Virus record (IMG/VR): IMGVR_UViG_3300020438_000007
Location: 166,740-230,739 of that record
Reading direction: 5' to 3' (one strand)
Length of the DNA stretch: 64,000 nucleotides
Part shown: positions 3,826 through 63,290 of the stretch, in pieces
Numbering within the stretch: position 1 is the stretch's first letter
Layout of the letters: every line of letters begins with the position of its first letter
Notes under the pieces: model-generated
The model's database searches: none
What the model was told of the DNA's origin: nothing
The model's input: only the letters and a program-made list of their open reading frames with translations
Made by a program: the position numbers and the translations under genes

Positions 3826-3852
3826 AGTGTGTTGTTTGTTTGTTATGTACTT

Positions 3853-4164: not shown

Positions 4165-4189
4165 TTAGTCCTCCTTTTTGTTTGTGTGG

Positions 4190-4970: not shown

Positions 4971-4991
4971 TGAATTACCTTATATGTTTAT

Positions 4992-5049
4992 ATTATAGTA
5001 TAATAAAATAGGATTGCAACCACTCATGTGACATTTATTCAACTGGCAC
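4992..5049 (-). promoter_or_regulatory. early promoter module 8
   Basis: TATAAT 4992-4997, TTGCAA 5014-5019; GTGACA-TTTATTCAAC-TGGCAC 5028-5049. Confidence 0.8.
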
Positions 5050-5063
5050 ACCCGATGAAGTGA

Positions 5064-6035: not shown

Positions 6036-6041
6036 ACTACC

Positions 6042-6099
6042 ATTATACACCATGCCAACAGGAAAACAACCCTCTCTGTACCAGTTTGTAGACTGTCAC
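6042..6099 (-). promoter_or_regulatory. early promoter module 9
   Basis: TATAAT 6042-6047; GTACCA-GTTTGTAGAC-TGTCAC 6078-6099. Confidence 0.75.
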
Positions 6100-6404
6100 A
6101 CAAAGAATTGTTCTAGTGGGGTCAAGTTAAGTTTCATTGCAGTATAGGGCGAAGTGTCCTCTATTGAGACTTCTTTACCTATTCTATTTGAATTGATGGG
6201 GGCGTAGTAAGCGTGCGTACTGCTTCTCTTTGTTCTCTTATGCTTGACGAATCCCCAGATACAACGAGATTCATCACCATCATTATAGAGAAACCTATAG
6301 TCAGATACAGTCCAGATAGCATCCACATTAGTTTTAAATTGTATCGACTCATAGCGGTATCCTTTAGGTGGTTGGTGAATAAAATCGTCTGGAAGTGCGG
6401 TCAC
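6096..6404 (-). CDS. conserved cyanophage hypothetical protein
   Basis: 102-aa ORF; F.H..P.GY.YE...CIWGF...YAPINS...TxPYTAM pattern. Confidence 0.75.
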   Translation of the reverse strand: MTALPDDFIHQPPKGYRYESIQFKTNVDAIWTVSDYRFLYNDGDESRCIWGFVKHKRTKRSSTHAYYAPINSNRIGKEVSIEDTSPYTAMKLNLTPLEQFFV

Positions 6405-6490
6405 AATTTATCAGTTAAAAGATTGTGGGAGAGATTCGACTTAAAGAGCATTTTCCACTGGGGTCGCTCACTCTTGCCTCCCACATTTAT

Positions 6491-6548
6491 ATAATAATCC
6501 ATTGGGATAGGATTACAACCAGTAGTGTGCCAGTTTATTATATGTCAC
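6491..6548 (-). promoter_or_regulatory. early promoter module 10
   Basis: -10 TATTAT 6491-6496; GTGCCA-GTTTATTATA-TGTCAC 6527-6548. Confidence 0.7.
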
Positions 6549-6729
6549 ATTCGGGGTTGAGAAATTGTCTATTTCGCTTTACCTTAGTAGTTGAAATATC
6601 AATTAGGTCTTCTAACTCTTCAATAGAATTAGATAGGTTATCATCATCTTTCTCTTCAGAATAGAAAAATAATGCTTCACTTAACAAGTTGAATTGCTTG
6701 TCAGTTAGTGTTACATCGATCTTATACAT
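6538..6729 (-). CDS. hypothetical protein
   Basis: 63-aa ORF. Confidence 0.65.
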   Translation of the reverse strand: MYKIDVTLTDKQFNLLSEALFFYSEEKDDDNLSNSIEELEDLIDISTTKVKRNRQFLNPECDI

Positions 6730-6730
6730 C

Positions 6731-7342
6731 TTACCTCATAGGTATGTTAAATGACATGATTGTCCTCTGTTTATCTGATTTAGATACTGGCGATTCATGT
6801 AACAATACAGAGGGGAAAGTTAGAATCTCACCTTCATTTACTGAAGGCGCAACCTTATCTATTGTACCATAAAAAGGGTTAGGATTAGGACTATAAAATG
6901 TAGTGGGAAAGTGCTCTTCTGCATCAAATTCAACATATAATACACATGATATATTCATTAAACCATGATTGTGGGCACCATGATATTGTCCTCTGTCATA
7001 TCTCTGTGACCATAGTTGCCAATCCTCAATACCTTTGAAAGGGCAATCTCCTCTATATCTATCATTCAATATCTGTGTGTATTCATTAACTAACCTATCT
7101 AAATCAGTTTCCAATATCTCATAAAACTCCATAAGATATGGTGCTGAAGTCTGATACTTATAGTAATCAGTCTGGCACTCATAATCTTGTTTAAAGTAAT
7201 CAAACTCTTGAAGATCATCACCAGTAAAATCCATTAGATTTAAGAGTTTAGATTTCTTGTCACTCCAATCATCTACCACAAACTTAGTGATAGGGAACCC
7301 AAATAGATTTAGAGATTGACCGTTCATTTCTTGTGATTTCAT
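6731..7342 (-). CDS. putative 2OG-Fe(II) oxygenase, TIGR02466-like (HxH type)
   Basis: HGAHNH...SCVLYV...FPSVLLHES...RTIMSFN. Confidence 0.8.
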   Translation of the reverse strand: MKSQEMNGQSLNLFGFPITKFVVDDWSDKKSKLLNLMDFTGDDLQEFDYFKQDYECQTDYYKYQTSAPYLMEFYEILETDLDRLVNEYTQILNDRYRGDCPFKGIEDWQLWSQRYDRGQYHGAHNHGLMNISCVLYVEFDAEEHFPTTFYSPNPNPFYGTIDKVAPSVNEGEILTFPSVLLHESPVSKSDKQRTIMSFNIPMR

Positions 7343-7620
7343 TTTCTGTCTTGAGAACCCTTGCCACCACTAGACCAAAGACCTGTTTTTTCCATAATTC
7401 TGTCCGTCAGGTGTGTTTGGTCATCCATCCCACTCTCGTTATGGAAAAAAGACTAAGTGTCATCCTAGAAGTTCATTTGTGCTTATAGTTCTTTCTTGAT
7501 TTGCGCCTTGGTTTTATACCCTTGTCTCTCTTCAACTCTGCTTTAAGTTTCTTTAGAAATTTCAAGTGATCAGGATACACCAATCTCATCAGATCCTTTT
7601 TAGTCTGTCTCGATTCTTTA

Positions 7621-7887
7621 CTAATCTCTGTCCACCTCAACATCATTTATGTCCTGAAATGTAATGTTTGCGATGTCCGAATCAGTCCAATCTGTGATAT
7701 CATCAAGGAATAAGTCGGTATCATCAAAATCATCTGCCTCGATCATCATTTCCTGTACTAATGCCTCAGCGTCCTCAAGTCGAACTTTATCCACCAAACT
7801 ACTCATCTGTGTGGCGAATTGCTCTTCCATGACTGAAAGGCATTGTGCTCTGATCTTGTCAATTTGTGCCATTGGTTTAATTACCAT
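7621..7887 (-). CDS. highly acidic small protein
   Basis: 88 aa, 24 D/E versus 6 K/R; TTGCAA-17-TATAAT promoter directly upstream. Confidence 0.7.
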   Translation of the reverse strand: MVIKPMAQIDKIRAQCLSVMEEQFATQMSSLVDKVRLEDAEALVQEMMIEADDFDDTDLFLDDITDWTDSDIANITFQDINDVEVDRD

Positions 7888-7924
7888 GTAGTTTAATTAT
7901 ACTATAATGTTAAGTTATTTGCAA

Positions 7925-9157
7925 CTACCTTGTCGCTCTTGATACCTGTGACTCTCCTCTAGTAAAGATAGTGTCAACAACTGATTGAAGGCGACGTTCT
8001 GTACCAATACCCACATTGCTGTAAACTGGTACAAACATCTTGCCAAATGGTTTTACATAACCATTTCCATTGATGTTAGGTTTGAGAGCACCTGTACTAA
8101 TCTTAAGTGCATCTTCCTTATGTAGTCGAATGACTCGACCAATAGTCTGTGCCATGGTGATTAGATCAAGATTCCTCAATAGAATACAAGCAGTCAATCC
8201 GCTCACATTCATACCCTCTGAGAGAATAGAATGATGAAACATGACAAACTTCTTGTCAGGGTCAGCACCCCACTTGTTCATCAAATTGAAGAATGTCTTG
8301 CGAGTGACCTTCTTACCATTGATGATAGCACCATACTTTGATGTAATCCACATTACATTGTATTTCATAGAGTGACATACTGCCATGAAATCAGTTTGAG
8401 TAATCAACTTGTGAATGTTCTTACTAGACTTAGCAGTGACCAATACTTTGTCCATGTGATCTTCATTTTCAAGAGCATCAAGAATCATACACCTGTCAAT
8501 CTGCTCGACTGATTCATAGAACCCGATAGGATACTTGACTGACTTGACTTGAGGCGGTACAATGTAACCCTTTTCAATCAACTCTGGAGCAGCGACTTCT
8601 GCAATAACATTACCATACACCTTGACATTGTTCATACCTCTCTCTTGTGATGTATGATGTTTAGGTGTGGCAGTGAAGTAAAACTTACGTCTGGTAATCT
8701 TAGAGCGATTCTTGACACTCTCAAAGAAGTTCCTTTGAACTGAATTGTGTGCCTCATCATAATATACTGTGTCTGCTTCAACATCTTCTCTGACTTTGTG
8801 AAGTGAGTGATATGTTGTAAAGATCAACTGGTTCCTTGTACTGTTATGATGCCACTCTTGAATCTCTTCTGGGTTAGTAGTAGTCTTATAGTTAGTCTCT
8901 CCACTATGAACATGAAGCACCTCGACATTATCAATGTGCTCTAAGAACTCCTCACACAACTGTTGTGCAAGTAAGATTCTAGGAGCAACAACAATAATAG
9001 TCTGCGGAATAGGCATACTGAATCGCCACTTAGCGTCCATAATCATACATATTGTTTTACCGCCACCTGTGGGTACAAGAACCTGCCCCCACTTGTGTTG
9101 CATGGTATCAATTATGTCTGTTTGATGGTCACGAAGTTGCATAGTCAGTTGTCTCAA
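7925..9157 (-). CDS. superfamily 2 DEAD/DEAH-box helicase (ResIII-like)
   Basis: PTGGGKT, YYDEAH, TATP, SEGMNV, QTIGRVIR. Confidence 0.9.
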   Translation of the reverse strand: MRQLTMQLRDHQTDIIDTMQHKWGQVLVPTGGGKTICMIMDAKWRFSMPIPQTIIVVAPRILLAQQLCEEFLEHIDNVEVLHVHSGETNYKTTTNPEEIQEWHHNSTRNQLIFTTYHSLHKVREDVEADTVYYDEAHNSVQRNFFESVKNRSKITRRKFYFTATPKHHTSQERGMNNVKVYGNVIAEVAAPELIEKGYIVPPQVKSVKYPIGFYESVEQIDRCMILDALENEDHMDKVLVTAKSSKNIHKLITQTDFMAVCHSMKYNVMWITSKYGAIINGKKVTRKTFFNLMNKWGADPDKKFVMFHHSILSEGMNVSGLTACILLRNLDLITMAQTIGRVIRLHKEDALKISTGALKPNINGNGYVKPFGKMFVPVYSNVGIGTERRLQSVVDTIFTRGESQVSRATR

Positions 9158-9164
9158 TACTCAT

Positions 9165-9222
9165 ATTATAGGATAAAAAAAGACCCCTGCATGGGGTCTT
9201 GTGACAGTTTCAGAACTGTGCC
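9165..9222 (-). promoter_or_regulatory. early promoter module 11 with embedded terminator
   Basis: TATAAT 9165-9170; GTGACA-GTTTCAGAAC-TGTGCC 9201-9222. Confidence 0.7.
9174..9200 (-). terminator. intrinsic terminator AAGACCCC-ATGCA-GGGGTCTTTTTTT
   Basis: GC stem followed by a U-run, downstream of ORF 9210..9395. Confidence 0.8.
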
Positions 9223-9395
9223 AATAGTTTTTGAGTCTCAGGATCGAACTCCTCTTTGACTCCATTGATGTCCATCAACCAATCATCTGCCTCAAGTCGT
9301 TCAAACTCTTCGGTTCCAAGTGTCCATTCGGGATCGCCCGAGAACATTTGGGCATTTTCTTCAAACTCTTGTGGGGTCATTGTCTTAATAATCAA
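9210..9395 (-). CDS. hypothetical acidic protein
   Basis: 61-aa ORF (TTG start call; ATG at 9380 also possible). Confidence 0.6.
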   Translation of the reverse strand: MIIKTMTPQEFEENAQMFSGDPEWTLGTEEFERLEADDWLMDINGVKEEFDPETQKLLAQF

Positions 9396-9425
9396 AATTT
9401 ACAAAAAATAATAAACACATCAAAC

Positions 9426-9659
9426 TCAGCAACTTGCAGGCGAGTATTGTTGTGGTTCAGTCAGGAAATCTGTCACCTGATAACCAAGATCGAGACGTGA
9501 ATTGATTGTCTCAGTCATTTCTCTCTTGCTCATCAGTCGCATTGACATAGCATTAACTTCGCCTTGATTGTTCTTCAGTTTGAGAGTATAAACGAATTTC
9601 TCAGTCAAAATGTTGTGAGGGCGGAACTCTACTGACATTGAACCTGATGTGAGTTGCAT
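9426..9659 (-). CDS. hypothetical early protein
   Basis: 77-aa ORF after promoter module 12. Confidence 0.7.
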   Translation of the reverse strand: MQLTSGSMSVEFRPHNILTEKFVYTLKLKNNQGEVNAMSMRLMSKREMTETINSRLDLGYQVTDFLTEPQQYSPASC

Positions 9660-9683
9660 GGGGTCTCTTGTGTTTACTCTCTT

Positions 9684-9741
9684 ATTATAATGGGATCAGA
9701 GTCCCCTGCAACCACCTGTGTGCCAGTTATCCAACTGGTGG
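9684..9741 (-). promoter_or_regulatory. early promoter module 12
   Basis: TATAAT 9684-9689; GTGCCA-GTTATCCAAC-TGGTGG 9720-9741. Confidence 0.75.
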
Positions 9742-10026
9742 TGTGCCTGGTGCCTGAGCAGGCATTGATTCCATATCAAACTTACTAGATGCCTTCTCTA
9801 GTTCTACCTTACCCTTGAGGGCATTGACCTCTGCAATAAGAGTCTTAATATCATCTTGTTGTTTATACAAGGCAGCATTAACCAATGACTCCAATGTAGT
9901 CAATCTCTCATCAAGATTACCAATGGTTCGCATTGATGCTTGTAATTGTTTCTTTAGTCTATCTACTTGTTGCAACTTAGTTTTAGTAAGTGCTTCTGTG
10001 TCTGATGTTAGTGAATCGTATCCCAT
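9727..10026 (-). CDS. coiled-coil hypothetical protein
   Basis: 99-aa heptad-rich ORF; late-type CTAAATA at 10047-10053. Confidence 0.7.
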   Translation of the reverse strand: MGYDSLTSDTEALTKTKLQQVDRLKKQLQASMRTIGNLDERLTTLESLVNAALYKQQDDIKTLIAEVNALKGKVELEKASSKFDMESMPAQAPGTPPVG

Positions 10027-10066
10027 AATTTATGTTACTCTTTGATTATTTAGATAGGTGTGCGTA

Positions 10067-10492
10067 TTACCTGATGTACAGATAACCACCTGCCCAGTCA
10101 CAGTTTGATAGCATCCACTGACGTTGATTGATGTCTCTCATATCAAATCTAACGTGTTTAGCAGGTGCTTTCCATGAAGCAGGTTTGTAAACCTCTCCTG
10201 TCATTTTGTCAACAAAAGCATGAACCCCTGCACTATCATATTTGCCTTGGTGGTAGTCATTCTGAATGATCTTATGATACCTTTTGCCTGATGTTATAGT
10301 AAACCTCATGCACTCTTCATCATTCTCAATTTTGTTAATCCTATCCTGTAGGTATGGATTATTTTCCTCTGAATTATTCTTGATGCAAGAGCGAACTGCG
10401 TAGTTCTTATACTGTTGTTCGAGAGCACGGCAAAGTGTCTCTGTCCATTGAAGTACTTCTACTTTTGTGAGTGATTGTTCTAGTGTTGACAT
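10067..10492 (-). CDS. conserved cyanophage hypothetical protein (VHAFVDKxTGEVYKPASWKAPAK)
   Basis: 141-aa ORF with a motif recognised from T4-like cyanophages. Confidence 0.85.
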   Translation of the reverse strand: MSTLEQSLTKVEVLQWTETLCRALEQQYKNYAVRSCIKNNSEENNPYLQDRINKIENDEECMRFTITSGKRYHKIIQNDYHQGKYDSAGVHAFVDKMTGEVYKPASWKAPAKHVRFDMRDINQRQWMLSNCDWAGGYLYIR

Positions 10493-10518
10493 AATCTTTG
10501 TTTGTATTGTTGTTTGTT

Positions 10519-10566
10519 AAAGAGAAAAGGGGGGAAAGGTAACAAACACAAAACCTTTCCCTCCAC
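10519..10566 (-). ncRNA. candidate hairpin sRNA / attenuator (GGAGGGAAAGGU-UUUGUGUUUGUU-ACCUUUCCCCCC-UUUUCUCUUU)
   Basis: 11 of 12 bp stem, 12-nt loop and U-run, immediately after promoter module 13. Confidence 0.5.
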
Positions 10567-10572
10567 ATTCAT

Positions 10573-10630
10573 ATATTACTGCTTTATGGTGGTAATACAA
10601 CCACCTATGTGCCACTACTTCAACTGTCCA
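10573..10630 (-). promoter_or_regulatory. early promoter module 13
   Basis: Degenerate -10 TAATAT 10573-10578; GTGCCA-CTACTTCAAC-TGTCCA 10609-10630. Confidence 0.65.
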
Positions 10631-10821
10631 CTCTTACCAAGTCTGTGTAGATAGTAACCTATGAGAGCACCAATACCCATCTTAAACAAGGCACTGAAAG
10701 AATTGTCAATTCGATTCAAATTAATATCTGTGCCTGTACCATACTCACTATTCCTCAAATGATAGTGAACAGTTTTGGGTCTGGTTTTCATGGCAATAAT
10801 ATAGTTGGGTGCGAGAAACAA
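10615..10821 (-). CDS. small protein with C-terminal hydrophobic segment
   Basis: ORF track; probable start MKTRPK. Confidence 0.55.
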   Translation of the reverse strand: MFLAPNYIIAMKTRPKTVHYHLRNSEYGTGTDINLNRIDNSFSALFKMGIGALIGYYLHRLGKSGQLK

Positions 10822-10918
10822 AAACGTGGACTTAAACTCATTGACTTCTTTTTACGTTTAGGACTTGCACCTAACCCAATGGATGCCAGTTTTGTTTCCC
10901 ATTATCATTATAGGTCAT

Positions 10919-11644
10919 CTACCTGTCCTTGTCAAGTTCTTGGTTCTCATTGTACTGAGGGTTGCACTCTTCTGTAAATGCTTTCCTTCTCTCTTGTGGT
11001 GTTAGTTGTACCACTCGCCAACCGTAGTCTCCATTAGTGACAATGGTGGGCATCATGTTCATTGATAATGTGACTCTGTTGTCTCCATTATTATGTTGAT
11101 AACCATGTATGACTTGAGCAGGGAAAATCATCAGTTCGCCCTCTTTCACCTGTACTTGATTATCCTGATTGTGGTCTGTAAACTTCTTCCGCATCAATGT
11201 TAGACTAGGCATTACAGGATAGTATAAATTTTCTTCTCTTGTGAAGTGTGTATTTACATGATCTTTTGTAACATCAAAGTTCACATAATATATGCAACTT
11301 AGGTAAGAATTGCTATGAAAGTGTGGATGTTGGTATCCACCCTTGTCGCTTATGTTATACCAACTATCTGTAACTGCTACTGTCTCCTGTATATAATGAC
11401 CTAGAACTTCCTTTGCATAATATTCTCCTTGTTGTTCACACCAATTTTTAAATCTACCATACTTCATATCCTCATGGAGCACAGAGTAATGTCCAAGGTG
11501 CTTTAACGCCTTTGAGTTTGCATTGTAAGATAACTGATTGCTTTTCTGTTCTTCAATGTCATCTAACATATTTTGCTTTACCTTATCATGGAATGGGCAC
11601 TCCACGATAAGAACTGGCGTTGGCAGAATGTTTACTACTTCCAT
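10919..11644 (-). CDS. putative 2OG-Fe(II) oxygenase, TIGR02466-like
   Basis: DSWYN...QHPHFHSNS.LSCIYY...FPAQVIHG...RVTLSMN. Confidence 0.85.
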   Translation of the reverse strand: MEVVNILPTPVLIVECPFHDKVKQNMLDDIEEQKSNQLSYNANSKALKHLGHYSVLHEDMKYGRFKNWCEQQGEYYAKEVLGHYIQETVAVTDSWYNISDKGGYQHPHFHSNSYLSCIYYVNFDVTKDHVNTHFTREENLYYPVMPSLTLMRKKFTDHNQDNQVQVKEGELMIFPAQVIHGYQHNNGDNRVTLSMNMMPTIVTNGDYGWRVVQLTPQERRKAFTEECNPQYNENQELDKDR

Positions 11645-15445: not shown

Positions 15446-17038
15446 ATGAACGAGAATTATTCTTTAGAAGAAGAACAAAAAGAATATGAGATAGAATCTA
15501 ATCCCGAACTGCAAAGGAATGAGTTAAATCCCTCTGTAGCAACGGTCATGTATTCACATGAGAAGGTCTATAAGACTCTTGCAACTGTTGGAGACTTTGT
15601 ATGTCATATTTGGTACTATGATGATAACTATGACCCTCAGAGATCCACTGAGGGGTCTAAGAGAATCCATATTGTACCTACTGACAATATTCTAAGGCAT
15701 GATACTGACAGTGAACTGGTAAACTACTGGTTTAACATTGCCAATGACAAGTGGCCTCAAGGTGTAATCTTTGTCAACCCTATCATAAGGAGAAATGGGG
15801 TTAAGTTTGTAAGCAACAGTGACCTTAGAGACTGTGTGAAGTATATGTCAGGTGTTGCTGCACACTATGATGCAAACTCTAGTGACATTGTGGCGATTGA
15901 TGTTGAAGACGGCAATAAAATGTATGAGATGAGTTATGATGTGTCCGCTTCTAAGATATACTCTGACGTATCAAACAACACCTATGATGACTTCACTTCA
16001 GGACCCCTTAGTGGTGGTAGTTTAAGTCTATCATACGATCAATCGTTTGGAAGTGGTCAGATCTCTATGAGTAGTCTTGCTGTTACACTAAGTGGTTCGT
16101 CTCCAGAAAATTTCAGTCAGTATTATAGAGGCAACAAAGTTGCAAATATATCTCAAAACAATAGTGTTCCCACTAGTGGCACTTTCTCATTCAGTCAGTT
16201 GAGAAACGTAACCACTGGTGTGACTGCTAATGCTAATGGAAATTGGATGCACCTACAAGCAAGATGGGAAGTATTTACTGGTGGAATATGGGAATCCAAT
16301 TTAAATAAGAGATTGAATGTAACTGGTAGTGTTGGAGGAGCGACTGACAACCCTGCACTGCGATTTAATGGTTCTGGCGCAGGCAAAATTGATGTATCTA
16401 TTTCGGGTGATGTGAGGGGAGTCTCTGGCACGCCTGGTTTGCAAGGTGTCGCAGGCCTTGGTAAACCTGGCGGAACTGCAAATAAGGCAATGCACGTTGC
16501 AAGTCCAATCAGGATGTCTAGTGGTGACCTAAACAGCAGAATCCGTGGCGGTGGCGGCGGAGGCGGCGGTGGCGGTGGTGGAGGTAAAGGTGGTGGCGGA
16601 GGTCACGGCGGAGGTAGAAGATGTAGAGGTTGGTTCTGTAATAGTTCCGAAAGAGTATGCCACAATAATGGTGGTCAAGGTGGTGCTGGTGGTAATGGAG
16701 GAATTGGTGGAGTAGGTGCTGGATATGTTTGGGCTGGATCTTATTTCGCAGCGCACTCTGGTAGTGCTGGATATGGTGGCCAAGGCGGTTCAGGCGGTAG
16801 TTCTAGAGGAGGTGGCCAAGGCGGAAATGGTGGTGGCGGCGGTAGAGGCGGCGGACATGAACAAAATGGCACTGCTGGTAACCAAGGTTCAAAAGGCGAT
16901 CGAGGCGAAAGAAACGAGGAAAGTTGCGGATATGCCGGCGATGGTAGACGTGGTGGACAAGGCAGTAATGGAGGCGCTGGAGGTGGTAATGCAGGTAAGT
17001 GGACAACTAGTGGTAGTGGAGGTATAACTAATATCTAA
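15446..17038 (+). CDS. glycine-rich tail-fibre/adhesin-like virion protein
   Basis: 530 aa; SGQISMSSL / VPTSGTFSFSQL fibre-type motif; C-terminal ~190 aa Gly-rich; late-type ATAAATA at 15414-15420. Confidence 0.65.
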   Translation: MNENYSLEEEQKEYEIESNPELQRNELNPSVATVMYSHEKVYKTLATVGDFVCHIWYYDDNYDPQRSTEGSKRIHIVPTDNILRHDTDSELVNYWFNIANDKWPQGVIFVNPIIRRNGVKFVSNSDLRDCVKYMSGVAAHYDANSSDIVAIDVEDGNKMYEMSYDVSASKIYSDVSNNTYDDFTSGPLSGGSLSLSYDQSFGSGQISMSSLAVTLSGSSPENFSQYYRGNKVANISQNNSVPTSGTFSFSQLRNVTTGVTANANGNWMHLQARWEVFTGGIWESNLNKRLNVTGSVGGATDNPALRFNGSGAGKIDVSISGDVRGVSGTPGLQGVAGLGKPGGTANKAMHVASPIRMSSGDLNSRIRGGGGGGGGGGGGGKGGGGGHGGGRRCRGWFCNSSERVCHNNGGQGGAGGNGGIGGVGAGYVWAGSYFAAHSGSAGYGGQGGSGGSSRGGGQGGNGGGGGRGGGHEQNGTAGNQGSKGDRGERNEESCGYAGDGRRGGQGSNGGAGGGNAGKWTTSGSGGITNI

Positions 17039-56865: not shown

Positions 56866-56983
56866 CTAATCCTTCGTTTGCAAAGAATCCTCTGTAAATG
56901 CCATAAAATATGAACAATACAGTGATAACTGCAATTGAGATGGGTAATGTAAATTCTGGGTCAAATGTGTAATGGGAAATCAT
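56837..56983 (-). CDS. psbN: PsbN-like photosystem II assembly peptide (48 aa)
   Basis: Manually translated MISHYTFDPEFTLPISIAVITVLFIFYGIYRGFFANEGLDDPFDDHDD; single TM followed by L.DPF..H.D PsbN tail; absent from the ORF track. Confidence 0.75.
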   Translation of the reverse strand: MISHYTFDPEFTLPISIAVITVLFIFYGIYRGFFANEGLDDPFDDHDD

Positions 56984-57228
56984 CATCTTCTACTAATAAA
57001 AACGTCGCCTTCGCCATCATCATCTTCATCTCTTCGAGGATTGAAGACTAATAACTGTTCTCCAGACTCTACATCTCGCATTTCTGGATGTAAATCTGAT
57101 CTCTTGGTTCTTGTTGGTTTGTTCATTTCATCAAATGTCGCAGTCATGGTTTTAAACATAAATGCAAATGTTGCCCCCAATAAAGCGACAAAAAAGGTCA
57201 AATACAAAAATATCATGAAATCGTTCAT
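56983..57228 (-). CDS. DUF2973-like small membrane protein
   Basis: TM segment followed by HPEM...EQLLVF. Confidence 0.65.
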   Translation of the reverse strand: MNDFMIFLYLTFFVALLGATFAFMFKTMTATFDEMNKPTRTKRSDLHPEMRDVESGEQLLVFNPRRDEDDDGEGDVFISRR

Positions 57229-57557
57229 CTGTTGAATAACTTTTGGATGGGAACTTGCCTCACTCTATCTATAACGTCATTTTCGACTCTATCTACGATC
57301 CTGTCCAATAAACCAATATCAATCTGCATGAATGGCGGAATGATACCCAATAAACGGAGTAATCCATCTACAAATAAAGCAAGAGTTGTAAATCCAAGGA
57401 TCATACTGAGGACAGTTGCATCACGATTATGTTTTGCCATTGATGCTTCATCAATCTTCCTTGCCTCGCCTATGGCATATTTGATGAGTTCATCAACCTC
57501 TTCTTTTGTGTATGTATCCCTTTTTGGTTTATATACGTCTGAAATAGGTAAATCCAT
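57225..57557 (-). CDS. conserved cyanobacterial/cyanophage membrane protein
   Basis: IDEASMAKHNRDAT.LSMILGF..LALFVDGLLR.LGIIPPFM; start MDLP at 57557. Confidence 0.8.
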   Translation of the reverse strand: MDLPISDVYKPKRDTYTKEEVDELIKYAIGEARKIDEASMAKHNRDATVLSMILGFTTLALFVDGLLRLLGIIPPFMQIDIGLLDRIVDRVENDVIDRVRQVPIQKLFNR

Positions 57558-57559
57558 AA

Positions 57560-57628
57560 GCTGACCCTGTAGGACAGAAAAATACCCGAATTTTTTTACC
57601 AGCTTTTTAGGCTTTGAAAGCTGATTTT
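57560..57628 (-). repeat. intergenic structured element, copy A
   Basis: AAAATCAGCTTT-loop-AAAGCTGG-A7-TCGG...AGGGTCAGC; related copy at 60932-61000. Confidence 0.7.
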
Positions 57629-57636
57629 CGTTTTGG

Positions 57637-57906
57637 TTAGTATCTATCTGGAATTTTGTCATAACTTTTGGAGTAGTCTGAGGGTTTCGCTTGTCGGATA
57701 CATCCAACAGCTTTTTCAAAACAAACTGAATTGAATTTGCCGTCTACTCCGATCAAAGTTATCTTAGTATGCTGAGAATGAATCTCAACTTCTTCTACTA
57801 AGTATGTATTTCCTTCGATAAGTTTAAGTTGAGGATCATCATTGTTCCCCCACCTAACTTGCTCAGGTGTACAACCCAAAAATCTGACTTGATCTCCTAT
57901 TTTCAT
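57637..57906 (-). CDS. conserved phage hypothetical (EQVRWGNNDDP...Y.V..VE.HSQHTKI.L.G..GKFNSVCF)
   Basis: 89-aa ORF. Confidence 0.8.
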   Translation of the reverse strand: MKIGDQVRFLGCTPEQVRWGNNDDPQLKLIEGNTYLVEEVEIHSQHTKITLIGVDGKFNSVCFEKAVGCIRQAKPSDYSKSYDKIPDRY

Positions 57907-57989
57907 AGTCCTCTATGTGGATCATAATATAAAAGTGTCCATGCAATGTAAATGGTTGCTAGGACACTGGGAATTAGTAATAAAGGCAT
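57903..57989 (-). CDS. 28-aa single-TM micropeptide
   Basis: Manually translated MPLLLIPSVLATIYIAWTLLYYDPHRGL; ATGA overlap with the next gene. Confidence 0.45.
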   Translation of the reverse strand: MPLLLIPSVLATIYIAWTLLYYDPHRGL

Positions 57990-58006
57990 TGTAATGCAAT
58001 GGTTAA

Positions 58007-58156
58007 TTAAATTATATCGGAATCTTGATCTTCTGTCAAGGGAAGTCCGAGTGTTTTTATGTTTAAAAGTTCTTGGAGAAATTTTATCTCCGCTTTTAGT
58101 TTCTGGTTTTCTTCTTCTAAGAAGTCGCAGTGCTCTGCGTAAATGTGAATACTCAT
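58007..58156 (-). CDS. 49-aa coiled-coil peptide
   Basis: Manually translated. Confidence 0.5.
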   Translation of the reverse strand: MSIHIYAEHCDFLEEENQKLKAEIKFLQELLNIKTLGLPLTEDQDSDII

Positions 58157-58164
58157 AAATGCGA

Positions 58165-58188
58165 AGAGACCCCCTTTCGGAGGTCTCT
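58165..58188 (-). terminator. GAAA-tetraloop hairpin, probable terminator or processing stem
   Basis: AGAGACCTCC-GAAA-GGGGGTCTCT; weak U-tract. Confidence 0.5.
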
Positions 58189-58211
58189 GAGTTTAGTTCA
58201 TTGGTTTGGAA

Positions 58212-58373
58212 TTACCGTAAGATTTCTGTACATACTTTTCGACAGTAATTGTCCGTACAATCTATCATACAGGCAAAGTATTCGTCGATTAAGTCGTCCT
58301 GAGAAAATTCAGGATTTGTATCTTCGTGATGAATCCATTCTGCCATTTGATTGCGTGACATTCGGGTTCTCAT
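58212..58373 (-). CDS. 53-aa peptide with four Cys (DEYFACMIDC...C..VC)
   Basis: Manually translated; GAGGAG SD; TATAAATA at 58455-58462. Confidence 0.65.
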   Translation of the reverse strand: MRTRMSRNQMAEWIHHEDTNPEFSQDDLIDEYFACMIDCTDNYCRKVCTEILR

Positions 58374-58657
58374 AAATTTCTTCTCCTCTGAATTGTGATT
58401 TACATAACGAAGTTTTTCAGCATCACTTCATTTTGTCCGTCCTAATTCTACCAGTATTTATAGAGCAATTCCCGATTTTTGTGTTGAAGTTCACACACTG
58501 TAATGGCGTATTTTTACCCACGCATTAATACTTACCTTCCTTTATATACATCATAATCAAGAAGGCCGCACTGGTGGCAACCGTTATCGACAATGCAATG
58601 ATTGCCGTATGTACTATGTTCACAAAATTTACTTAACATAACGTAATATTTATACCA

Positions 58658-58828
58658 TCAATCATCTTCCGTGTATGCTGATGGATTTTTCCTGAGAAAT
58701 TGCTTGCAATGTCCATGAACATCTATCTCCTGTTCCAAGTGTGCCTTAGTATGCACAACTTCAATGAATCCTATAATTAATAGTAAAAACACTGGTGCAA
58801 ACCAGAGTGGATTAGAAAGTATTTTCAT
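58658..58828 (-). CDS. 56-aa TM + His-rich peptide (IEVVHTKAHL...DVHGHC)
   Basis: Manually translated. Confidence 0.6.
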   Translation of the reverse strand: MKILSNPLWFAPVFLLLIIGFIEVVHTKAHLEQEIDVHGHCKQFLRKNPSAYTEDD

Positions 58829-58832
58829 TCAT

Positions 58833-58862
58833 AAAAAAAAACCTCTACAATATGTAGAGGTT
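58833..58862 (-). terminator. intrinsic terminator after the DUF4278 gene
   Basis: AACCTCTACA-T-ATTGTAGAGGT hairpin followed by a U-run. Confidence 0.8.
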
Positions 58863-58892
58863 AACGACAAGTAGATGTTTGTCAACTACTGA

Positions 58893-59036
58893 TCAGCTCT
58901 TAGATGCGAACTTGCGTTCCACCTTGACACCACGATACATTAGATCGTGACGTTGCTTCTTAGCAGCTTCTTCGAGTACCTTTGCATTGTACTCGGCAGA
59001 GTCATAAGAGACTCCTCTGTATGTGACTTGTGCCAT
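58893..59036 (-). CDS. DUF4278-family peptide (47 aa)
   Basis: MAQVTYRGVSY...LMYRGVKV (repeated L.YRG motif); AGGAG SD at 59045-59049. Confidence 0.85.
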   Translation of the reverse strand: MAQVTYRGVSYDSAEYNAKVLEEAAKKQRHDLMYRGVKVERKFASKS

Positions 59037-59073
59037 CGGTTTTACTCCTGTAAGTAGTAGGGGGGTTTTAAAT

Positions 59074-59257
59074 CCCGTTCCTTCAGTCGTCATTTGCGTC
59101 CCAGCACCCAGGCGTTGACTCTTGCATAACAAGAATCAGTTCCGCCTTCTCGTTCTCACTTAACGTGTTGTTCCTAAGTATTCGATCAGTAATGTCGAAT
59201 GCTTGAGAACACTCAAGTGAAGTATAGAGTAACAAGAGAGGTATCATGGGATGAACG
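59074..59257 (-). promoter_or_regulatory. glutamine-II (Downstream-peptide) riboswitch copy 2, with a ~150-nt ORF-bearing insertion in P2
   Basis: CGTTCATCCCA...TGGGACGCAAATGACGACTGAAGGAACGGG upstream of DUF4278. Confidence 0.75.
59083..59247 (-). CDS. 54-aa ORF nested in the riboswitch (MIPLLLLYTSLECSQ...STPGCWDANDD)
   Basis: Manually translated, 55 codons, no internal stop; two Cys; hydrophobic N-terminus. Confidence 0.65.
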   Translation of the reverse strand: MIPLLLLYTSLECSQAFDITDRILRNNTLSENEKAELILVMQESTPGCWDANDD

Positions 59258-59259
59258 AT

Positions 59260-59321
59260 CCGTTCCGTGTCGGCTTACTTGCGTCCCCTCATTCTGCCAA
59301 AGGCAACTTGGGGGATGAACG
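59260..59321 (-). promoter_or_regulatory. glutamine-II (Downstream-peptide) riboswitch copy 1
   Basis: CGTTCATCCCC...GGGGACGCAAGTAAGCCGACACGGAACGG. Confidence 0.75.
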
Positions 59322-59330
59322 TGTGTGTTA

Positions 59331-59359
59331 ATTATAACACAATGCAATTATTTATGCAA
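59331..59359 (-). promoter_or_regulatory. sigma70 promoter TTGCAT-17-TATAAT with an overlapping late TAAATA
   Basis: Hexamers 59354-59359 and 59331-59336; TAAATA 59349-59354. Confidence 0.8.
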
Positions 59360-59395
59360 GTTTTTTGCAGCAATAGCGTGTGTATTGTTACAATT

Positions 59396-60931
59396 TTATG
59401 AAGATTTAACATTGTCACCTAGTACTAGAGTGTCTAGACCAGTCTCATAAAATAGTTCCAAGGCATCCCCAAACCTTCCAGCTATGGGTTTACCACCATT
59501 ATTTAGGGAAGTATTGAGCAAGACAGGTGATCCAGTCAACTTCTCAAACTCCTGTAGTAGACTGTAATAATCTTCTTGAGATTCATTTACTGTGTTGATT
59601 CTACATGTACCATCTACATGTGTGATTGTAGGATATCTGTCTGGTTCTAACACATCAGTCACATATAACATGTATGGACTGGGACCATTCCAGTAGAAAT
59701 TTTCACTTACCTTCTCTTCTAAAACAGAGGCACCGAATGGTCTGAATGGTTCTCTATGTTTAACCTTATTATTAATAAAGTCTTTCCCATGAGGATCAAA
59801 AGGATTCATAAGTATACTTCTATTACCTAATGCTCTAGGACCTATCTCACCATGTCCTTGATACCAACCAACAATCTCACCCTTGGCGAGTCTTTCTGCG
59901 GTCTCCTTGATAGTTTTGGTAGAAGGTCTATCAATAGGAGCCTGATCATCTTGCATAAAGGGGAATCCTTCTGTGGGGAGTGGCATCATATTGTGTTCCC
60001 TTCTTAGAAACTCTATTGCACCAAGACTCAATCCCTGATCGTATGCGTGTGGTGGTATAACAAGATTAGGTATGGCATCTTTCAATACCTTATTAATAAT
60101 AGTATTCTGTGCCACACCACCAGAGTACCCAACAATATCATCTGGTTTAACAAACTCTAGAAAATGTTTTAGATATATCTGTTCTGTATATTCATGTGCT
60201 GTATGAATATAATCCATGATGTATTGTTGATCGTGAAGATTATGATCTATTACATCAAAATTCCATAGTTTTTCTAGATCATCTATACCAATACCCTTAG
60301 CAGATATATCTGGATCATGTTTACCAAACGCTTTCAGAGCCATGATCTTCCCTGCCTGATCTAGGTAATGACCACCCATCTGTAAGGCAGCACCCATCCT
60401 AGTCATAATGAATCCAAGACTAGGAGAACCCTGTTGACTTGGAAATATACCTACTGTCTTGCCATGATCTATAAGTTTATCATCTCTCCATACACTACGA
60501 TACATCCAATCATCACCGAATCCATCAAAGACGAAGTGAAGATTGGGTTTGACCTTCATAGGCCAGAAACTTAATGTATGTGCATAGTGATGATCTATCC
60601 TGTGAATAGGGCATCTAAATCCTAAGTCTTTGAAAAAAGGTATATCTACTACTTCTGATATCTCTTGGGAATTTATAGAGAAGGATGTATGTACGACACC
60701 CATCCTTTCATATTCAGTTCCAGCACAGTCCATGATGATGCAGACACCATCAATAAACCAAGGTTGGATATTCCAATCCTCAAGTATTCTTGTCCATTGA
60801 TATACTCCGTTCTCAAAACCTACATGCTTACATTGATAGTCTCTTTCAAAAGATCTATATCTGACAGTCTCTCCGTCATAGTAAGTTACGTTTGCGTCAT
60901 GAGAGTCTAGTCTTAGACCTAATAATTTCAT
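59396..60931 (-). CDS. carbamoyltransferase (NodU/CmcH/TobZ family)
   Basis: HD.N, DHHYAH, DG.GD, GK.MAL, SGGVAQN, EIGPRALGNRSIL, REPFRPF, HVDGT.R, LLNTSLN. Confidence 0.95.
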   Translation of the reverse strand: MKLLGLRLDSHDANVTYYDGETVRYRSFERDYQCKHVGFENGVYQWTRILEDWNIQPWFIDGVCIIMDCAGTEYERMGVVHTSFSINSQEISEVVDIPFFKDLGFRCPIHRIDHHYAHTLSFWPMKVKPNLHFVFDGFGDDWMYRSVWRDDKLIDHGKTVGIFPSQQGSPSLGFIMTRMGAALQMGGHYLDQAGKIMALKAFGKHDPDISAKGIGIDDLEKLWNFDVIDHNLHDQQYIMDYIHTAHEYTEQIYLKHFLEFVKPDDIVGYSGGVAQNTIINKVLKDAIPNLVIPPHAYDQGLSLGAIEFLRREHNMMPLPTEGFPFMQDDQAPIDRPSTKTIKETAERLAKGEIVGWYQGHGEIGPRALGNRSILMNPFDPHGKDFINNKVKHREPFRPFGASVLEEKVSENFYWNGPSPYMLYVTDVLEPDRYPTITHVDGTCRINTVNESQEDYYSLLQEFEKLTGSPVLLNTSLNNGGKPIAGRFGDALELFYETGLDTLVLGDNVKSS

Positions 60932-61000
60932 GCTGACCCTACGGTTCAAATTTTTATCCGAGTTTTTTTCCCAGCTTTTTGTGTTTTAAAAGCTGATTTT
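60932..61000 (-). repeat. intergenic structured element, copy B
   Basis: AAAATCAGCTTTT-loop-AAAAGCTGG-A7-CTCGG...AGGGTCAGC-ATG. Confidence 0.7.
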
Positions 61001-61253
61001 ACATGCCAGGTGGCATCGAAGGATCATTCATAGGCATACCAGAACCAGGCATATTATATCCCTGACCCATTCCACCCATGCCAGGAGGTCCTCCCTGTTG
61101 TCCTCCACCACCAAACTGACGGTTGACTCCGCCTGGTTGCATCTTCTCAAACCCATGTTCAACTCTATGAGATTCTACAGTTTGTTTAATTGTTTCCAAT
61201 TCTTTCTGTAGATCCTTTAACTTATAGAGGATCAAATCAATCTTATCTTCCAT
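60999..61253 (-). CDS. coiled-coil + G/P/M-rich low-complexity protein
   Basis: 84-aa ORF. Confidence 0.7.
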   Translation of the reverse strand: MEDKIDLILYKLKDLQKELETIKQTVESHRVEHGFEKMQPGGVNRQFGGGGQQGGPPGMGGMGQGYNMPGSGMPMNDPSMPPGM

Positions 61254-62977: not shown

Positions 62978-63061
62978 TGGGAGAAGAGGGACTCGAACCC
63001 TCACGACATTTCTGCCAACAGATTTTAAGTCTGGTGTGTCTACCGATTCCACCACACTCCC
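62978..63061 (-). tRNA. tRNA-Leu(UAA)
   Basis: Cloverleaf with long variable arm, loop CT-TAA-AA, GGTTCGAGTCC; CCA not encoded. Confidence 0.93.
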
Positions 63062-63064
63062 GAA

Positions 63065-63138
63065 CGACTCAAGTAGGACTCGAACCTACGACCGACTGCT
63101 TAGAAGGCAGTTGCTCTATCCATCTGAGCTATTGAGTC
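63065..63138 (-). tRNA. tRNA-Arg(UCU)
   Basis: ACTGC-CT-TCT-AA-GCAGT anticodon arm; 7-bp acceptor stem. Confidence 0.95.
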
Positions 63139-63141
63139 TGG

Positions 63142-63215
63142 AGCCACTTGTCGGACTTGAACCGACGACCTACGCATTACAAATGCGTTGCTCTATCCAG
63201 CTGAGCTAAAGTGGC
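63142..63215 (-). tRNA. tRNA-Thr(UGU)
   Basis: ACGCA-TT-TGT-AA-TGCGT anticodon arm; U73. Confidence 0.95.
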
Positions 63216-63218
63216 GAA

Positions 63219-63290
63219 TAGGACTACCGAGAATTGAACTCGGTTCACACCGTTATAAGCAGTGGGCATTAACCAATATGCGATAGTCCC
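63219..63290 (-). tRNA. tRNA-Ile(UAU)
   Basis: CACTG-CT-TAT-AA-CGGTG anticodon arm; A73; T-loop GTTCAAT. Confidence 0.88.

What the first reader, a model, noticed from the sequence alone, without database searches (positions are those of the whole stretch)
57560..61000. Duplicated ~70-nt intergenic element with switch-like alternative pairing
Seen: two copies 3.4 kb apart (57560-57628, 60932-61000), each filling the gap from an upstream stop codon to the next ATG: AAAAUCAGCUUU(U)-loop-(A)AAAGCUGG-A7-UCGG-N~17-AGGGUCAGC-(UU)AUG. Stem and terminal motifs are conserved while loops differ. The same UCAGC occurs in the 5' arm and next to the start codon, so both can pair with GCUGG. Inference: a cis-regulatory RNA in which a ribosome terminating upstream (or a ligand/protein) melts the hairpin and lets GCUGG sequester the downstream start region. 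One copy controls the carbamoyltransferase. It matches no motif I can name.
Basis: partly seen in the sequence, partly recalled or inferred. Interest (0 to 1): 0.65.

Follow-up and report, generated by a model that had tools for sequence, protein, structure and literature searches.

The report
Conserved cyanophage intergenic hairpin cassette
The two look-alike 70-80-nt stretches are real copies of a short cassette (hairpin, A-run, UUCGGG box, AGGGUC box) found two or three times per genome in many T4-like marine cyanophages; it is related to transcription terminators and sits at the head of accessory-gene modules, but the proposed on/off pairing switch is not conserved.

Summary
Both copies exist on the gene (minus) strand, 79% identical, far beyond chance. 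They belong to an ~80-nt family with 2-3 copies per genome in at least five cyanomyovirus genera (S-SSM7, Syn9, S-SSM4, P-SSM7, Sf-FS3) and many IMG/VR contigs. No credible copy was found in a bacterial or archaeal genome, and Rfam has no match.

Architecture: a hairpin, an invariant A7-8 run, UUCGGG, an AU-rich stretch, then AGGGUC 3-9 nt before the next AUG. The 5' hairpin (H1) covaries. Where H1 is absent, the A-run is the loop of a canonical terminator (ACCCCGAA-A6-UUCGGGGU-U7). H1 and this terminator hairpin share one arm.

The 3' half is under purifying selection (identity 0.90, against 0.62 at synonymous sites). Copy A lies in an open frame and is probably translated.

Best reading (about 0.4): a terminator-derived, PeSL-like intercistronic cassette, with the terminator disabled in this window, that heads accessory-gene modules. 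The function of the conserved 3' half is not shown.

The parts
57551..57632 (-). Copy A of the cassette (full covariance-model match)
   Evidence: cmsearch 80 bits, E 1.2e-18; sequence
60922..61003 (-). Copy B of the cassette (full covariance-model match), directly upstream of the carbamoyltransferase gene
   Evidence: cmsearch 76.3 bits, E 1.3e-17; sequence
57600..57623 (-). Hairpin H1 of copy A (CAGCUUU / AAAGCUG, 10-nt loop)
   Evidence: MFE fold; covariation in the family; also flagged as terminator-like on the + strand with an ATTTT tail
60972..60995 (-). Hairpin H1 of copy B (CAGCUUUU / AAAAGCUG, 8-nt loop)
   Evidence: MFE fold; covariation; + strand terminator-like site
57591..57597 (-). 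A7 run of copy A. Invariant in the family; it forms the loop of terminator hairpin H2 in other members.
   Evidence: Alignment A2, invariant columns; H2 folds
60963..60969 (-). A7 run of copy B
57585..57590 (-). UUCGGG box of copy A. It is the 3' arm of H2 in terminator-type members. Here H2 is only -1.6 kcal/mol, although a U-rich tail follows.
60957..60962 (-). CUCGGA, the diverged UUCGGG box of copy B. H2 is -3.5 kcal/mol and there is no U tail.
57563..57568 (-). AGGGUC box of copy A (A, G and U invariant in the family), 5 nt before the ATG at 57555-57557
60935..60940 (-). AGGGUC box of copy B, 3 nt (AGC) before the ATG at 60929-60931. The A of AGC is the sublineage-specific insertion that creates UCAGC.
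59396..60931 (-). Carbamoyltransferase gene headed by copy B
   Evidence: Pfam Carbam_trans_C, E 2.8e-55; phrog_1601, E 7e-176
57225..57662 (-). Small ORF (phrog_7360; labelled 'gp7', T4-GC 246 in S-SSM7). It is 110 aa from the ATG at 57557, or 145 aa from the ATG at 57662; the long form contains copy A.
57637..57906 (-). Upstream ORF of copy A (89 aa, phrog_3426). Its stop codon varies among TAA, TAG and TGA in relatives, and the changes before it are synonymous.
60999..61253 (-). Upstream ORF of copy B (84 aa, Gly/Met/Pro-rich, no family match). Its TAA overlaps the AAAAU that starts the cassette.

Best explanation
Both copies belong to a conserved ~80-nt cis-acting cassette of T4-like cyanophages that punctuates gene junctions. 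The family is terminator-related. In its plainest members the A-run is the loop, and UUCGGGG the 3' arm, of a canonical intrinsic terminator followed by U7. In three genera a copy sits at the convergent junction between the gp32 module and the baseplate genes; two of these (P-SSM7, S-SSM4) are this terminator type, while the Syn9 copy carries H1. In the window's copies the 5' arm of that terminator has been changed and re-paired with an upstream partner (hairpin H1). This leaves the terminator hairpin weak (copy A) or without a U tail (copy B), so the polymerase reads through. What remains is a stable hairpin at the 3' end of the upstream cistron. It is followed by an A/U-rich, mostly unstructured spacer and a purine box (AGGG) 4-7 nt before the AUG of the next gene. 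I read this as a portable intercistronic 'insulator plus ribosome-entry' linker that heads accessory-gene modules (carbamoyltransferase, speD, prnA, oxygenase-like and hli-like genes). New genes are inserted next to it, in the manner of the PeSL cassettes of coliphage-type T4 relatives, but without a recognisable sigma-70 promoter. Shown: family membership, H1 covariation, terminator-type relatives, mutual exclusivity of H1 and H2, purifying selection on the 3' half, varied gene contexts, and RNA-library contigs that bridge the element. Inferred: read-through as the functional state, the RNA-stabilising and ribosome-entry roles, and the linker role in gene shuffling.
For: The family occurs in S-SSM7, Syn9, S-SSM4, P-SSM7 and Sf-FS3 at 2-3 copies per genome and in more than 70 distinct IMG/VR sequences. 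H1 covaries. Nine of 70 distinct members have no H1 but a -10 to -15 kcal/mol H2 with 7-8 U in the 10-nt tail; 37 have a strong H1 and a weak H2. The P-SSM7, S-SSM4 and Syn9 copies lie at the gp32-module / gp53-gp48 convergent junction. In 23 distinct carbamoyltransferase contexts the stretch from the A-run to the ATG has mean pairwise identity 0.90. Codon positions 1, 2 and 3 of the gene behind it score 0.86, 0.88 and 0.62. At least 12 different downstream gene clusters and 18 upstream clusters flank the cassette, and the start codon usually lies 1-9 nt after AGGGUC. speD is inserted exactly between the cassette and the carbamoyltransferase ATG in four contigs. S-SSM7 has pstS and a DUF680 gene inserted between the two copies. 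Contigs from RNA libraries of two studies span both copies, and an oligo-dT-library contig ends inside the A-run of copy B. The published PeSL layout is stem-loop, AT-rich region, promoter, SD, start codon, at sites of insertions and deletions (PMC4122927).
Against: No transcript end, start or cleavage site could be measured: Logan contigs cannot show them, and DNA carry-over in the RNA libraries is not excluded. AGGG is a weak Shine-Dalgarno match. The box is also kept where no same-strand gene follows (L010-type and the three copies at the convergent junction). So ribosome entry cannot be its only role, and the strong conservation of UUCGGG and AGGGUC at fixed spacing remains unexplained. 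Copy A seems to be translated through, which fits poorly with an insulator or ribosome-entry role at that site. H1 is no more stable on the sense strand than on the antisense strand, so an RNA role on the sense strand is not proven.
Confidence: 0.4

Rival explanations
1. A ribosome terminating upstream (or a factor) melts H1, and the freed GCUGG pairs with UCAGC beside the AUG, shutting off translation of the downstream gene.
For: Both window copies carry the complementary pentamer. In copy B the stop codon is 3 nt from H1, and with the 5' arm masked the MFE forms GCUGG:UCAGC. Across 52 distinct combinations of arm and start region the mean duplex energy is -4.66, against -3.89 +/- 0.20 after permutation, with 0 of 200 permutations as low. 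Other complementary forms exist: AAGCG:CGCUU, GACCC:GGGUC, GCGG:UCGC.
Against: The pairing is absent from S-SSM7 copy B and most carbamoyltransferase contexts, which read GGGUCGCAUG or GGGUCGAAUG with energies of -1 to -2.2 kcal/mol. A-type relatives whose arm is AGCGG or AGCGC have UCAAC, UCAAU or UCACU downstream, with no compensation. Copy A does not form it when H1 is masked. The stop-to-hairpin distance is not conserved. Copy A is probably translated. As a helix closing a loop of about 35 nt it is marginal.
Confidence: 0.08
2. A translation-coupled transcription attenuator. H1 acts as anti-terminator and H2 (GCUGGAA / UUC(U/G)GGC plus a U tract) as terminator. A ribosome sitting on the upstream stop codon blocks H1 and lets the terminator form.
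For: H1 and H2 share alignment columns 31-35 and so exclude each other. Five distinct relatives have both a strong H1 (-10 to -11.5 kcal/mol) and a good H2 (-6.5 to -7.3) with a U6-7 tail. In two of them (L089, L022) a stop codon abuts H1. H2 shows 78 G-U cells against 11 A-C cells, as expected for a sense-strand RNA helix.
Against: In the window H2 is -1.6 kcal/mol in copy A (G-G and U-U mismatches) and -3.5 kcal/mol without a U tract in copy B. In 52 of 73 sequences the central pair 35:48 is broken. RNA-library contigs bridge both copies.
Confidence: 0.1
3. A DNA-level signal. The 3' half (A-tract, TTCGGG, 15-bp AT-rich spacer, (T/C)AGGGT) is a promoter for a non-standard holoenzyme, or the binding site of an unknown phage or host protein that controls accessory-gene modules.
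For: Two sequence-specific boxes sit at fixed spacing next to an invariant A-tract. In AGGGT the A and T fall where -11A and -7T of a -10 hexamer would lie. Selection is stronger than on synonymous sites, even where copy A is translated. In several contexts the A of the ATG lies exactly 7 nt after that T (A-type, DUF6445-type, three speD contexts). Genes are inserted just behind the cassette. H1 shows no sense-strand preference.
Against: This phage's own sigma-70 promoters are near consensus (GGTTGA-N17-TATAAT) and the cassette has nothing like them. No promoter-like site is called in the cassette on the gene strand; the only site there lies on the opposite strand at copy A. In the carbamoyltransferase contexts the ATG starts only 3-4 nt after the putative -10, too close for a start site. 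At convergent junctions it would fire into the end of the opposing gene. With only 2-3 copies per genome it cannot be a general promoter class.
Confidence: 0.2
4. An antisense-strand terminator. On the + strand H1 is preceded by U7-8 and followed by AUUUU, and stops transcripts running against the genes.
For: Both copies are flagged as terminator-like on the + strand. The AAAAU flank and the A-run are the most conserved flanks. H1 is slightly more stable as antisense RNA, -5.63 against -5.32 kcal/mol and more stable in 34 cases against 20. In Syn9 the H1-bearing copy faces the end of the opposite-strand gp7-gp53 operon.
Against: There are no + strand genes near either window copy. The tail has only four U. 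This does not explain the strongly selected 3' half. The H2-type members terminate the sense strand.
Confidence: 0.1

Closest known systems
PeSL (promoter-early stem-loop) composite terminator/promoter cassettes of T4-like coliphages, Yersinia phages and vibriophages (Arbiol 2010, PMC2839356; Comeau 2014, PMC4122927)
   Same: Both are short repeated cassettes at gene junctions of T4-like phages. Both place a stem-loop first, then an AT-rich stretch, and end at the start codon of the next gene. Both lie beside insertions, deletions and replacements of accessory genes, and both occur as direct repeats a few kb apart.
   Different: The cassette has no recognisable sigma-70 -35/-10 pair with N17 spacing. 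Instead it carries the conserved boxes UUCGGG and AGGGUC. It occurs only 2-3 times per genome rather than dozens, and its sequence is unrelated. Mini-circle formation was not tested. This same genome does have a separate, true PeSL-like family: stem-loop GTGCCA..TGGCAC followed by GGTTGA-N17-TATAAT. PeSLs had been looked for in cyanophage S-PM2, where they were far sparser than in other T4-like phages (PMC4503421).
Rho-independent (intrinsic) transcription terminators
   Same: Terminator-type family members have an 8-9-bp G+C-rich stem followed directly by U7. Two of the three copies at a convergent gene junction (P-SSM7, S-SSM4) are of this type.
   Different: On the gene strand the window's copies have an A-run, not a U-run, after their stable hairpin. 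Their terminator-type hairpin is disrupted. A further 25 conserved nucleotides follow the U tract, which a terminator does not need.
Start-site-sequestering hairpins of T4 (genes e, soc, 49, I-TevI) and ribosome-dependent attenuators (from my own knowledge of the T4 literature, not tested here)
   Same: In both, alternative pairings involve a shared arm, and the proximity of an upstream stop codon means a ribosome could choose between them.
   Different: The sequestering helix is not conserved here. No late promoter lies inside the hairpin. There is no leader peptide with regulatory codons.

Membership tests
PeSL composite terminator/promoter cassette | Stem-loop immediately upstream of the rest of the cassette | tested here: met
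   H1 or H2 is present in nearly all members.
PeSL composite terminator/promoter cassette | Sigma-70-like -35 and -10 boxes separated by about 17 nt | tested here: not met
   No promoter-like site lies within either cassette on the gene strand. The boxes are TTCGGG and (T/C)AGGGT with a 15-nt spacer. The phage's own promoters read GGTTGA-N17-TATAAT.
PeSL composite terminator/promoter cassette | Shine-Dalgarno sequence and start codon of the downstream gene at the 3' end | tested here: inconclusive
   The start codon lies 1-9 nt after AGGGUC in most contexts. However, AGGG is a weak SD, and the box persists where no gene follows.
PeSL composite terminator/promoter cassette | Located at insertions, deletions or replacements of accessory genes; direct repeats flank cassettes | tested here: met
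   speD is inserted behind copy B in relatives. S-SSM7 has pstS and a DUF680 gene inserted between the copies. Neighbouring gene sets vary. Pairs lie 3-6 kb apart in many contigs.
PeSL composite terminator/promoter cassette | Recombination between copies yields mini-circles or deletions | not testable with these tools
   This needs PCR or long reads from infected cells. No joint linking the two copies appeared in four RNA runs, but contigs cannot exclude it.
Intrinsic terminator (gene strand) | Stable G+C-containing hairpin followed directly by a U tract | tested here: not met
   In the window's copies H1 is followed by A7. H2 is -1.6 kcal/mol in copy A and -3.5 kcal/mol without a U tail in copy B. 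No gene-strand terminator is called there. The feature is met in 9 of 70 distinct relatives.
Ribosome-dependent attenuator | Mutually exclusive anti-terminator and terminator hairpins, with translation deciding between them | tested here: inconclusive
   The exclusive hairpins exist. Both are strong in only 5 of 70 distinct relatives and in neither window copy. The position of the stop codon varies.
Any described RNA family (Rfam 15) | Covariance-model match | tested here: not met
   The only overlap is a chance-level Vimentin3 hit, E = 6.

The most novel reading that the evidence does not exclude
The cassette could be a previously undescribed cis-regulatory module of marine T4-like cyanophages. 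Its invariant core (A8, UUCGGG, N15, AGGGUC) would be the docking site of a specific phage or host factor, or a three-way RNA switch among H1, H2 and a start-region helix. Either would set the expression of auxiliary metabolic gene modules (carbamoyltransferase, speD, prnA, oxygenase-like and hli-like genes) across at least five genera.
Probability: 0.2. Interest if true: 0.75.

Novelty: new variant of a known kind. Interest (0 to 1): 0.5.

Why it matters
How marine cyanophages time and dose their auxiliary metabolic genes is poorly understood, yet these genes redirect host carbon, nitrogen and phosphorus metabolism in the ocean. A short, strongly selected cassette sits at the head of such gene modules and at a fixed terminator position in the core genome. 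It is shared by phages of Synechococcus and Prochlorococcus from several genera. This makes it a concrete, testable handle on both the expression and the shuffling of these genes. It would also be a useful annotation feature: GenBank currently calls an ORF straight through one copy in S-SSM7.

Tried and rejected
- **Rfam:** a scan at E <= 10 found nothing on the element.
- **RNAalifold:** the 73-sequence alignment gave no consensus structure, because H1-type and H2-type members are mixed.
- **Syn9 transcriptome paper:** Doron et al. 2016 (PMC5029184), which reports a 'novel early regulatory element', is not held. Citing papers do not quote the motif. So I could not check whether Syn9 transcript starts fall at 3009-3090 or 16045-16116. 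With 2-3 copies per genome the cassette is unlikely to be a general early promoter.
- **Host origin:** a scan of 185,579 bacterial and archaeal genomes gave 8 hits. Roughly a dozen chance hits would be expected (my own estimate). Two are short contigs of metagenome-assembled genomes that look like phage carry-over (not checked), and none is from an isolate cyanobacterium.
- **BLAST against named phages:** only S-SSM7 and S-SSM6a were found. The covariance model was needed to reach other genera.
- **Strand test by G-U versus A-C pairs in H1:** no preference.
- **Known motifs, compared by eye only:** NtcA sites (GTA-N8-TAC), Pho boxes, the T4 late promoter (TATAAATA / CTAAATA), sigma-54-like, ECF-like and SigF-like boxes, and IHF sites. 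None fits.
- **preQ1-like pseudoknot or A-minor triplex between the A-run and H1:** the loops are not complementary to the sequence after the A-run.
- **Gene-60-type translational bypass across copy A:** considered because 9 of 20 relatives lack a start codon there. Rejected in favour of the simpler upstream ATG, since the frame is open throughout and UAC landing would be out of frame.
- **Protein-coding explanation for the whole family:** rejected. Most non-A-type contexts carry an in-frame stop within the cassette, often the TAG of GUAGGGUC, and third codon positions in copy A are far too conserved.
- **RNA reads:** only assembled contigs were available, so no 5' or 3' ends could be read.

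Full report
**Setting.** The window is the last 64 kb of a 230.7-kb, 99%-complete T4-like cyanophage record. Its closest named relative is Synechococcus phage S-SSM7 (Lipsvirus, Kyanoviridae), at 81% nucleotide identity over this stretch. Nearly all genes here run on the minus strand, so the finding must be read as the reverse complement.

**Observation.** On the minus strand both copies read AAAAUCAGCUUU(U)-loop-AAAAAGCUGG-N-A7-(U/C)UCGG-N17-AGGGUCAGC-(UU)AUG.
- They are 79% identical over 112 aligned columns.
- The 21-nt core occurs twice in the window, against 0.05 expected by chance, and twice in the whole genome.
- Copy B runs from the TAA of an 84-aa ORF to the ATG of a carbamoyltransferase gene (Pfam E 2.8e-55).
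- Copy A runs from the stop of an 89-aa ORF (phrog_3426) to an ATG of a small ORF (phrog_7360).
- S-SSM7 has both copies at the orthologous places.

**A much larger family.** A scan of IMG/VR with a pattern that leaves the stem free (AAAAAAANTCGG-N12-24-AGGGTC) returned 117 stretches, most with exactly the same 35-nt spacing.
- Profile searches over these contigs gave 116 hits, 78 of them distinct.
- A gap-free alignment of 73 distinct sequences (A2) gave a covariance model (R1).
- R1 finds a third copy in this genome, at G000:6486-6567, between a glycosyltransferase-11 gene and a DUF6445 gene.
- It also finds one to three copies in each of S-SSM7, Syn9 (Ormenosvirus), S-SSM4 (Greenvirus), P-SSM7 (Palaemonvirus) and Sf-FS3.
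- No Rfam family matches.
- A scan of 185,579 prokaryote genomes gave only chance-level hits and no isolate cyanobacterium.

The element is therefore phage-specific, low in copy number and widespread.

**Anatomy** (A2 columns):
- AAAAU (columns 6-10).
- Hairpin H1 (columns 11-19 with 28-35).
- An invariant A7-8 run (37-44).
- UUCGGG (45-50).
- An AU-rich stretch (51-59).
- AGGGUC (67-72), in which the A, one G and the U are invariant.
- The next start codon, usually 1-9 nt later.

*H1 is a genuine hairpin.* Seven of its 8 pairs show changes on both sides (CAGC/GCUG, CCGC/GCGG, CGCU/AGCG, ACU/AGU, CC/GG). Its covariation score is 0.231, against 0.160 in shuffles (0 of 500 as high) and at most 0.157 when the partners are slid.

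*H2 replaces H1 in some members.* Members without H1 have a second hairpin, H2 (columns 31-38 with 45-52: ACCCCGAA-A6-UUCGGGGU, -10 to -15 kcal/mol), followed by U7. This is a textbook intrinsic terminator whose loop is the A-run.

*H1 and H2 use the same nucleotides (columns 31-35) and exclude each other.* Of 70 distinct sequences:
- 9 have only a strong H2 with a U tail;
- 37 have a strong H1 and a weak H2;
- 5 have both strong.

The window's copies are of the 'H1 strong, H2 weak' type. Copy A has H1 at -7.6 and H2 at -1.6 kcal/mol with a U-rich tail. Copy B has H1 at -9.0 and H2 at -3.5 kcal/mol without a U tail.

**Contexts.** The cassette is always on the gene strand and usually begins 0-15 nt after the stop of the upstream gene (in one context the stop lies inside the H1 loop). 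The neighbours differ widely: at least 12 downstream and 18 upstream protein clusters.
- The largest downstream clusters are carbamoyltransferase (34 contexts) and the phrog_7360 protein (22). By eye, other downstream ORFs look like speD, a prnA-type halogenase and an hli-like protein; these were not run against family libraries. The DUF6445 protein behind the third genomic copy was confirmed by Pfam.
- In P-SSM7, S-SSM4 and Syn9 one copy sits at the same core-genome position. This is the convergent junction between the gp32 module and the opposite-strand gp53/gp48 baseplate genes. In P-SSM7 and S-SSM4 that copy is the terminator type.
- Hence the family is terminator-related, and its 3' boxes persist even where no same-strand gene follows (also the L010-type).
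- In four contigs speD is inserted exactly between the cassette and the carbamoyltransferase ATG.
- S-SSM7 has pstS and a DUF680 gene inserted between the two copies.

**Selection.** In 23 distinct carbamoyltransferase contexts the stretch from the A-run to the ATG has mean pairwise identity 0.90, and the H1 half 0.73. Codon positions 1, 2 and 3 of the gene behind it score 0.86, 0.88 and 0.62. The 3' half is thus under purifying selection at the nucleotide level. H1 evolves by compensation.

**Copy A is not simply intergenic.**
- The frame of the downstream ORF is open through the cassette in all 20 distinct relatives, back to an ATG (window 57660-57662) that overlaps the end of the upstream ORF. 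S-SSM7's GenBank record calls that long ORF.
- Nine of the 20 have TTT, TTA or CTT where the window has ATG 57555-57557. Yet the following residues, D(L/F)P(I/V)SDV, show coding-type changes such as TCA to AGT, both serine.
- The TAT codon that supplies the upstream ATG is kept in 20 of 20.
- Even so, third codon positions inside the cassette are far more conserved (0.86-0.88) than in the ORF behind it (0.59). A nucleotide-level constraint therefore acts there too.
- In most of the other contexts examined, an in-frame stop within the cassette, often the TAG of GUAGGGUC, shows it is non-coding.

- With the 5' arm of H1 masked, copy B does fold GCUGG onto UCAGC beside the AUG. Copy A does not.
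- Across the family the helix is sporadic. Duplex energies are -6.4 kcal/mol or better in 15 of 52 distinct combinations. They are about -1 to -2 in S-SSM7 copy B and in many of the other carbamoyltransferase contexts.
- The UCAGC of copy B stems from a 1-nt insertion confined to the window's sublineage.
- A permutation test shows slightly more complementarity than chance (-4.66 against -3.89 +/- 0.20). Column counts show some double changes. A weak long-range interaction therefore cannot be excluded, but it is not a conserved feature.
- The alternative partner that is conserved for this arm is UUC(G/U)GG, forming H2.

**Expression evidence.** Assembled contigs from RNA libraries of two studies cover the region.
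- Several bridge copy A (56940-57753, 57516-57736) and copy B (60001-61010, 60906-61200, 60749-61158).
- One contig from an oligo-dT library ends inside the A-run of copy B (60965).
- This fits co-transcription through the cassette. It cannot show RNA ends, and it does not exclude DNA carry-over.

**Promoter question.**
- This phage's evident sigma-70 promoters are a different, abundant cassette: stem-loop GTGCCA..TGGCAC, GGTTGA-N17-TATAAT, then a CAA-repeat leader.
- The element studied here has no such boxes, and none is called on the gene strand.
- Its layout of A-tract, TTCGGG, 15-nt spacer and (T/C)AGGGT can be drawn as UP element, -35 and -10. In several contexts the ATG would then be +1.
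- In the carbamoyltransferase contexts, however, the ATG is only 3-4 nt away.
- I keep a DNA-level signal (odd promoter or protein site) as the main rival, at 0.2.

**Antisense terminator.** On the plus strand H1 with its AUUUU tail is flagged as terminator-like, and H1 shows no sense-strand preference. An antisense-terminator role is therefore also kept, at 0.1.

**Comparison with known systems.** The closest described system is the PeSL cassette of other T4-like phages: stem-loop, AT-rich region, sigma-70 promoter, SD and start codon, sitting at insertions and deletions and mediating gene shuffling (PMC4122927).
- The present cassette shares the layout, the junction position and the association with gene insertions.
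- It fails the defining promoter test and is unrelated in sequence.
- In cyanophage S-PM2, PeSLs were sought and found to be far sparser than in other T4-like phages (PMC4503421).
- I therefore file it as a new variant of that kind, related to intrinsic terminators, not as a PeSL member.

**Verdict.** This is a real, conserved and selected cis element. The hairpin is confirmed, and the specific switch model is not supported. The most likely reading (0.4) is a terminator-derived intercistronic cassette with the terminator disabled, heading accessory-gene modules. What the invariant 3' core actually binds or does remains open, and it is the interesting part.

Noticed in passing
window 59255-59324 (-): A likely glutamine riboswitch aptamer, below Rfam's threshold (RF01739 at 25.2 bits against a cut-off of 35; RF01704 at 25.1 against 33; E 3e-4 to 2e-3 in a local search). 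It keeps the conserved CGUUCA..CCCC/GGGG..ACGCAAGUA..GGAACG but has a ~20-nt insertion in a loop. It lies just downstream of the carbamoyltransferase gene and upstream of small ORFs, one of them DUF4278. It also has the highest RNA-contig depth of the stretch in one run.
   Followed up: partly
window ~290-10920 (-), e.g. 291, 1104, 2776, 3151, 3906, 9726; also G000 78-81 kb: About 15 copies of a different repeated cassette ahead of small ORFs. It consists of an inverted repeat GTGCCA..TGGCAC, then GGTTGA-N17-TATAAT, then a leader ATAACAAACAAAC and the ATG. It looks like a true PeSL-type promoter/stem-loop family in a cyanophage, with a CAA-repeat leader and no Shine-Dalgarno sequence.
   Followed up: partly
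window 57225-57662 (-): The small phrog_7360 ORF behind copy A probably starts at ATG 57660-57662 (145 aa), overlapping the upstream ORF by 26 nt, rather than at 57557 (110 aa). Nine of 20 relatives lack a start codon at the latter position.
   Followed up: yes
L113:975-1320; also L018, L123, L141: In some relatives a 116-aa speD-like gene is inserted exactly between cassette B and the carbamoyltransferase ATG. The two junctions look alike (CATAATGAAA and CATTATGAAA), and the stop of the inserted gene overlaps the next start (ATGA).
   Followed up: partly
P-SSM7 2159-2237; S-SSM4 172244-172322; Syn9 3009-3090: In three genera a copy of the cassette sits at the same core-genome spot: the convergent junction between the gp32 module and the gp53/gp48 baseplate genes. 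In P-SSM7 and S-SSM4 that copy is the terminator type; the Syn9 copy carries H1. A Syn9 mutant with a 14-bp deletion in the non-coding region after gp6 has been published (PMC8776855), but which 14 bp were removed is not stated in the text I could read.
   Followed up: partly
window 62978-63290 (-): Four tandem tRNA genes (Rfam tRNA, 54-71 bits).
   Followed up: no
G000:6486-6567 (-), outside the window: A third, diverged copy of the cassette (UCUCUGG in place of UUCGGG, CAGGUUG in place of AGGGUC) between a glycosyltransferase family 11 gene and a DUF6445 gene.
   Followed up: yes
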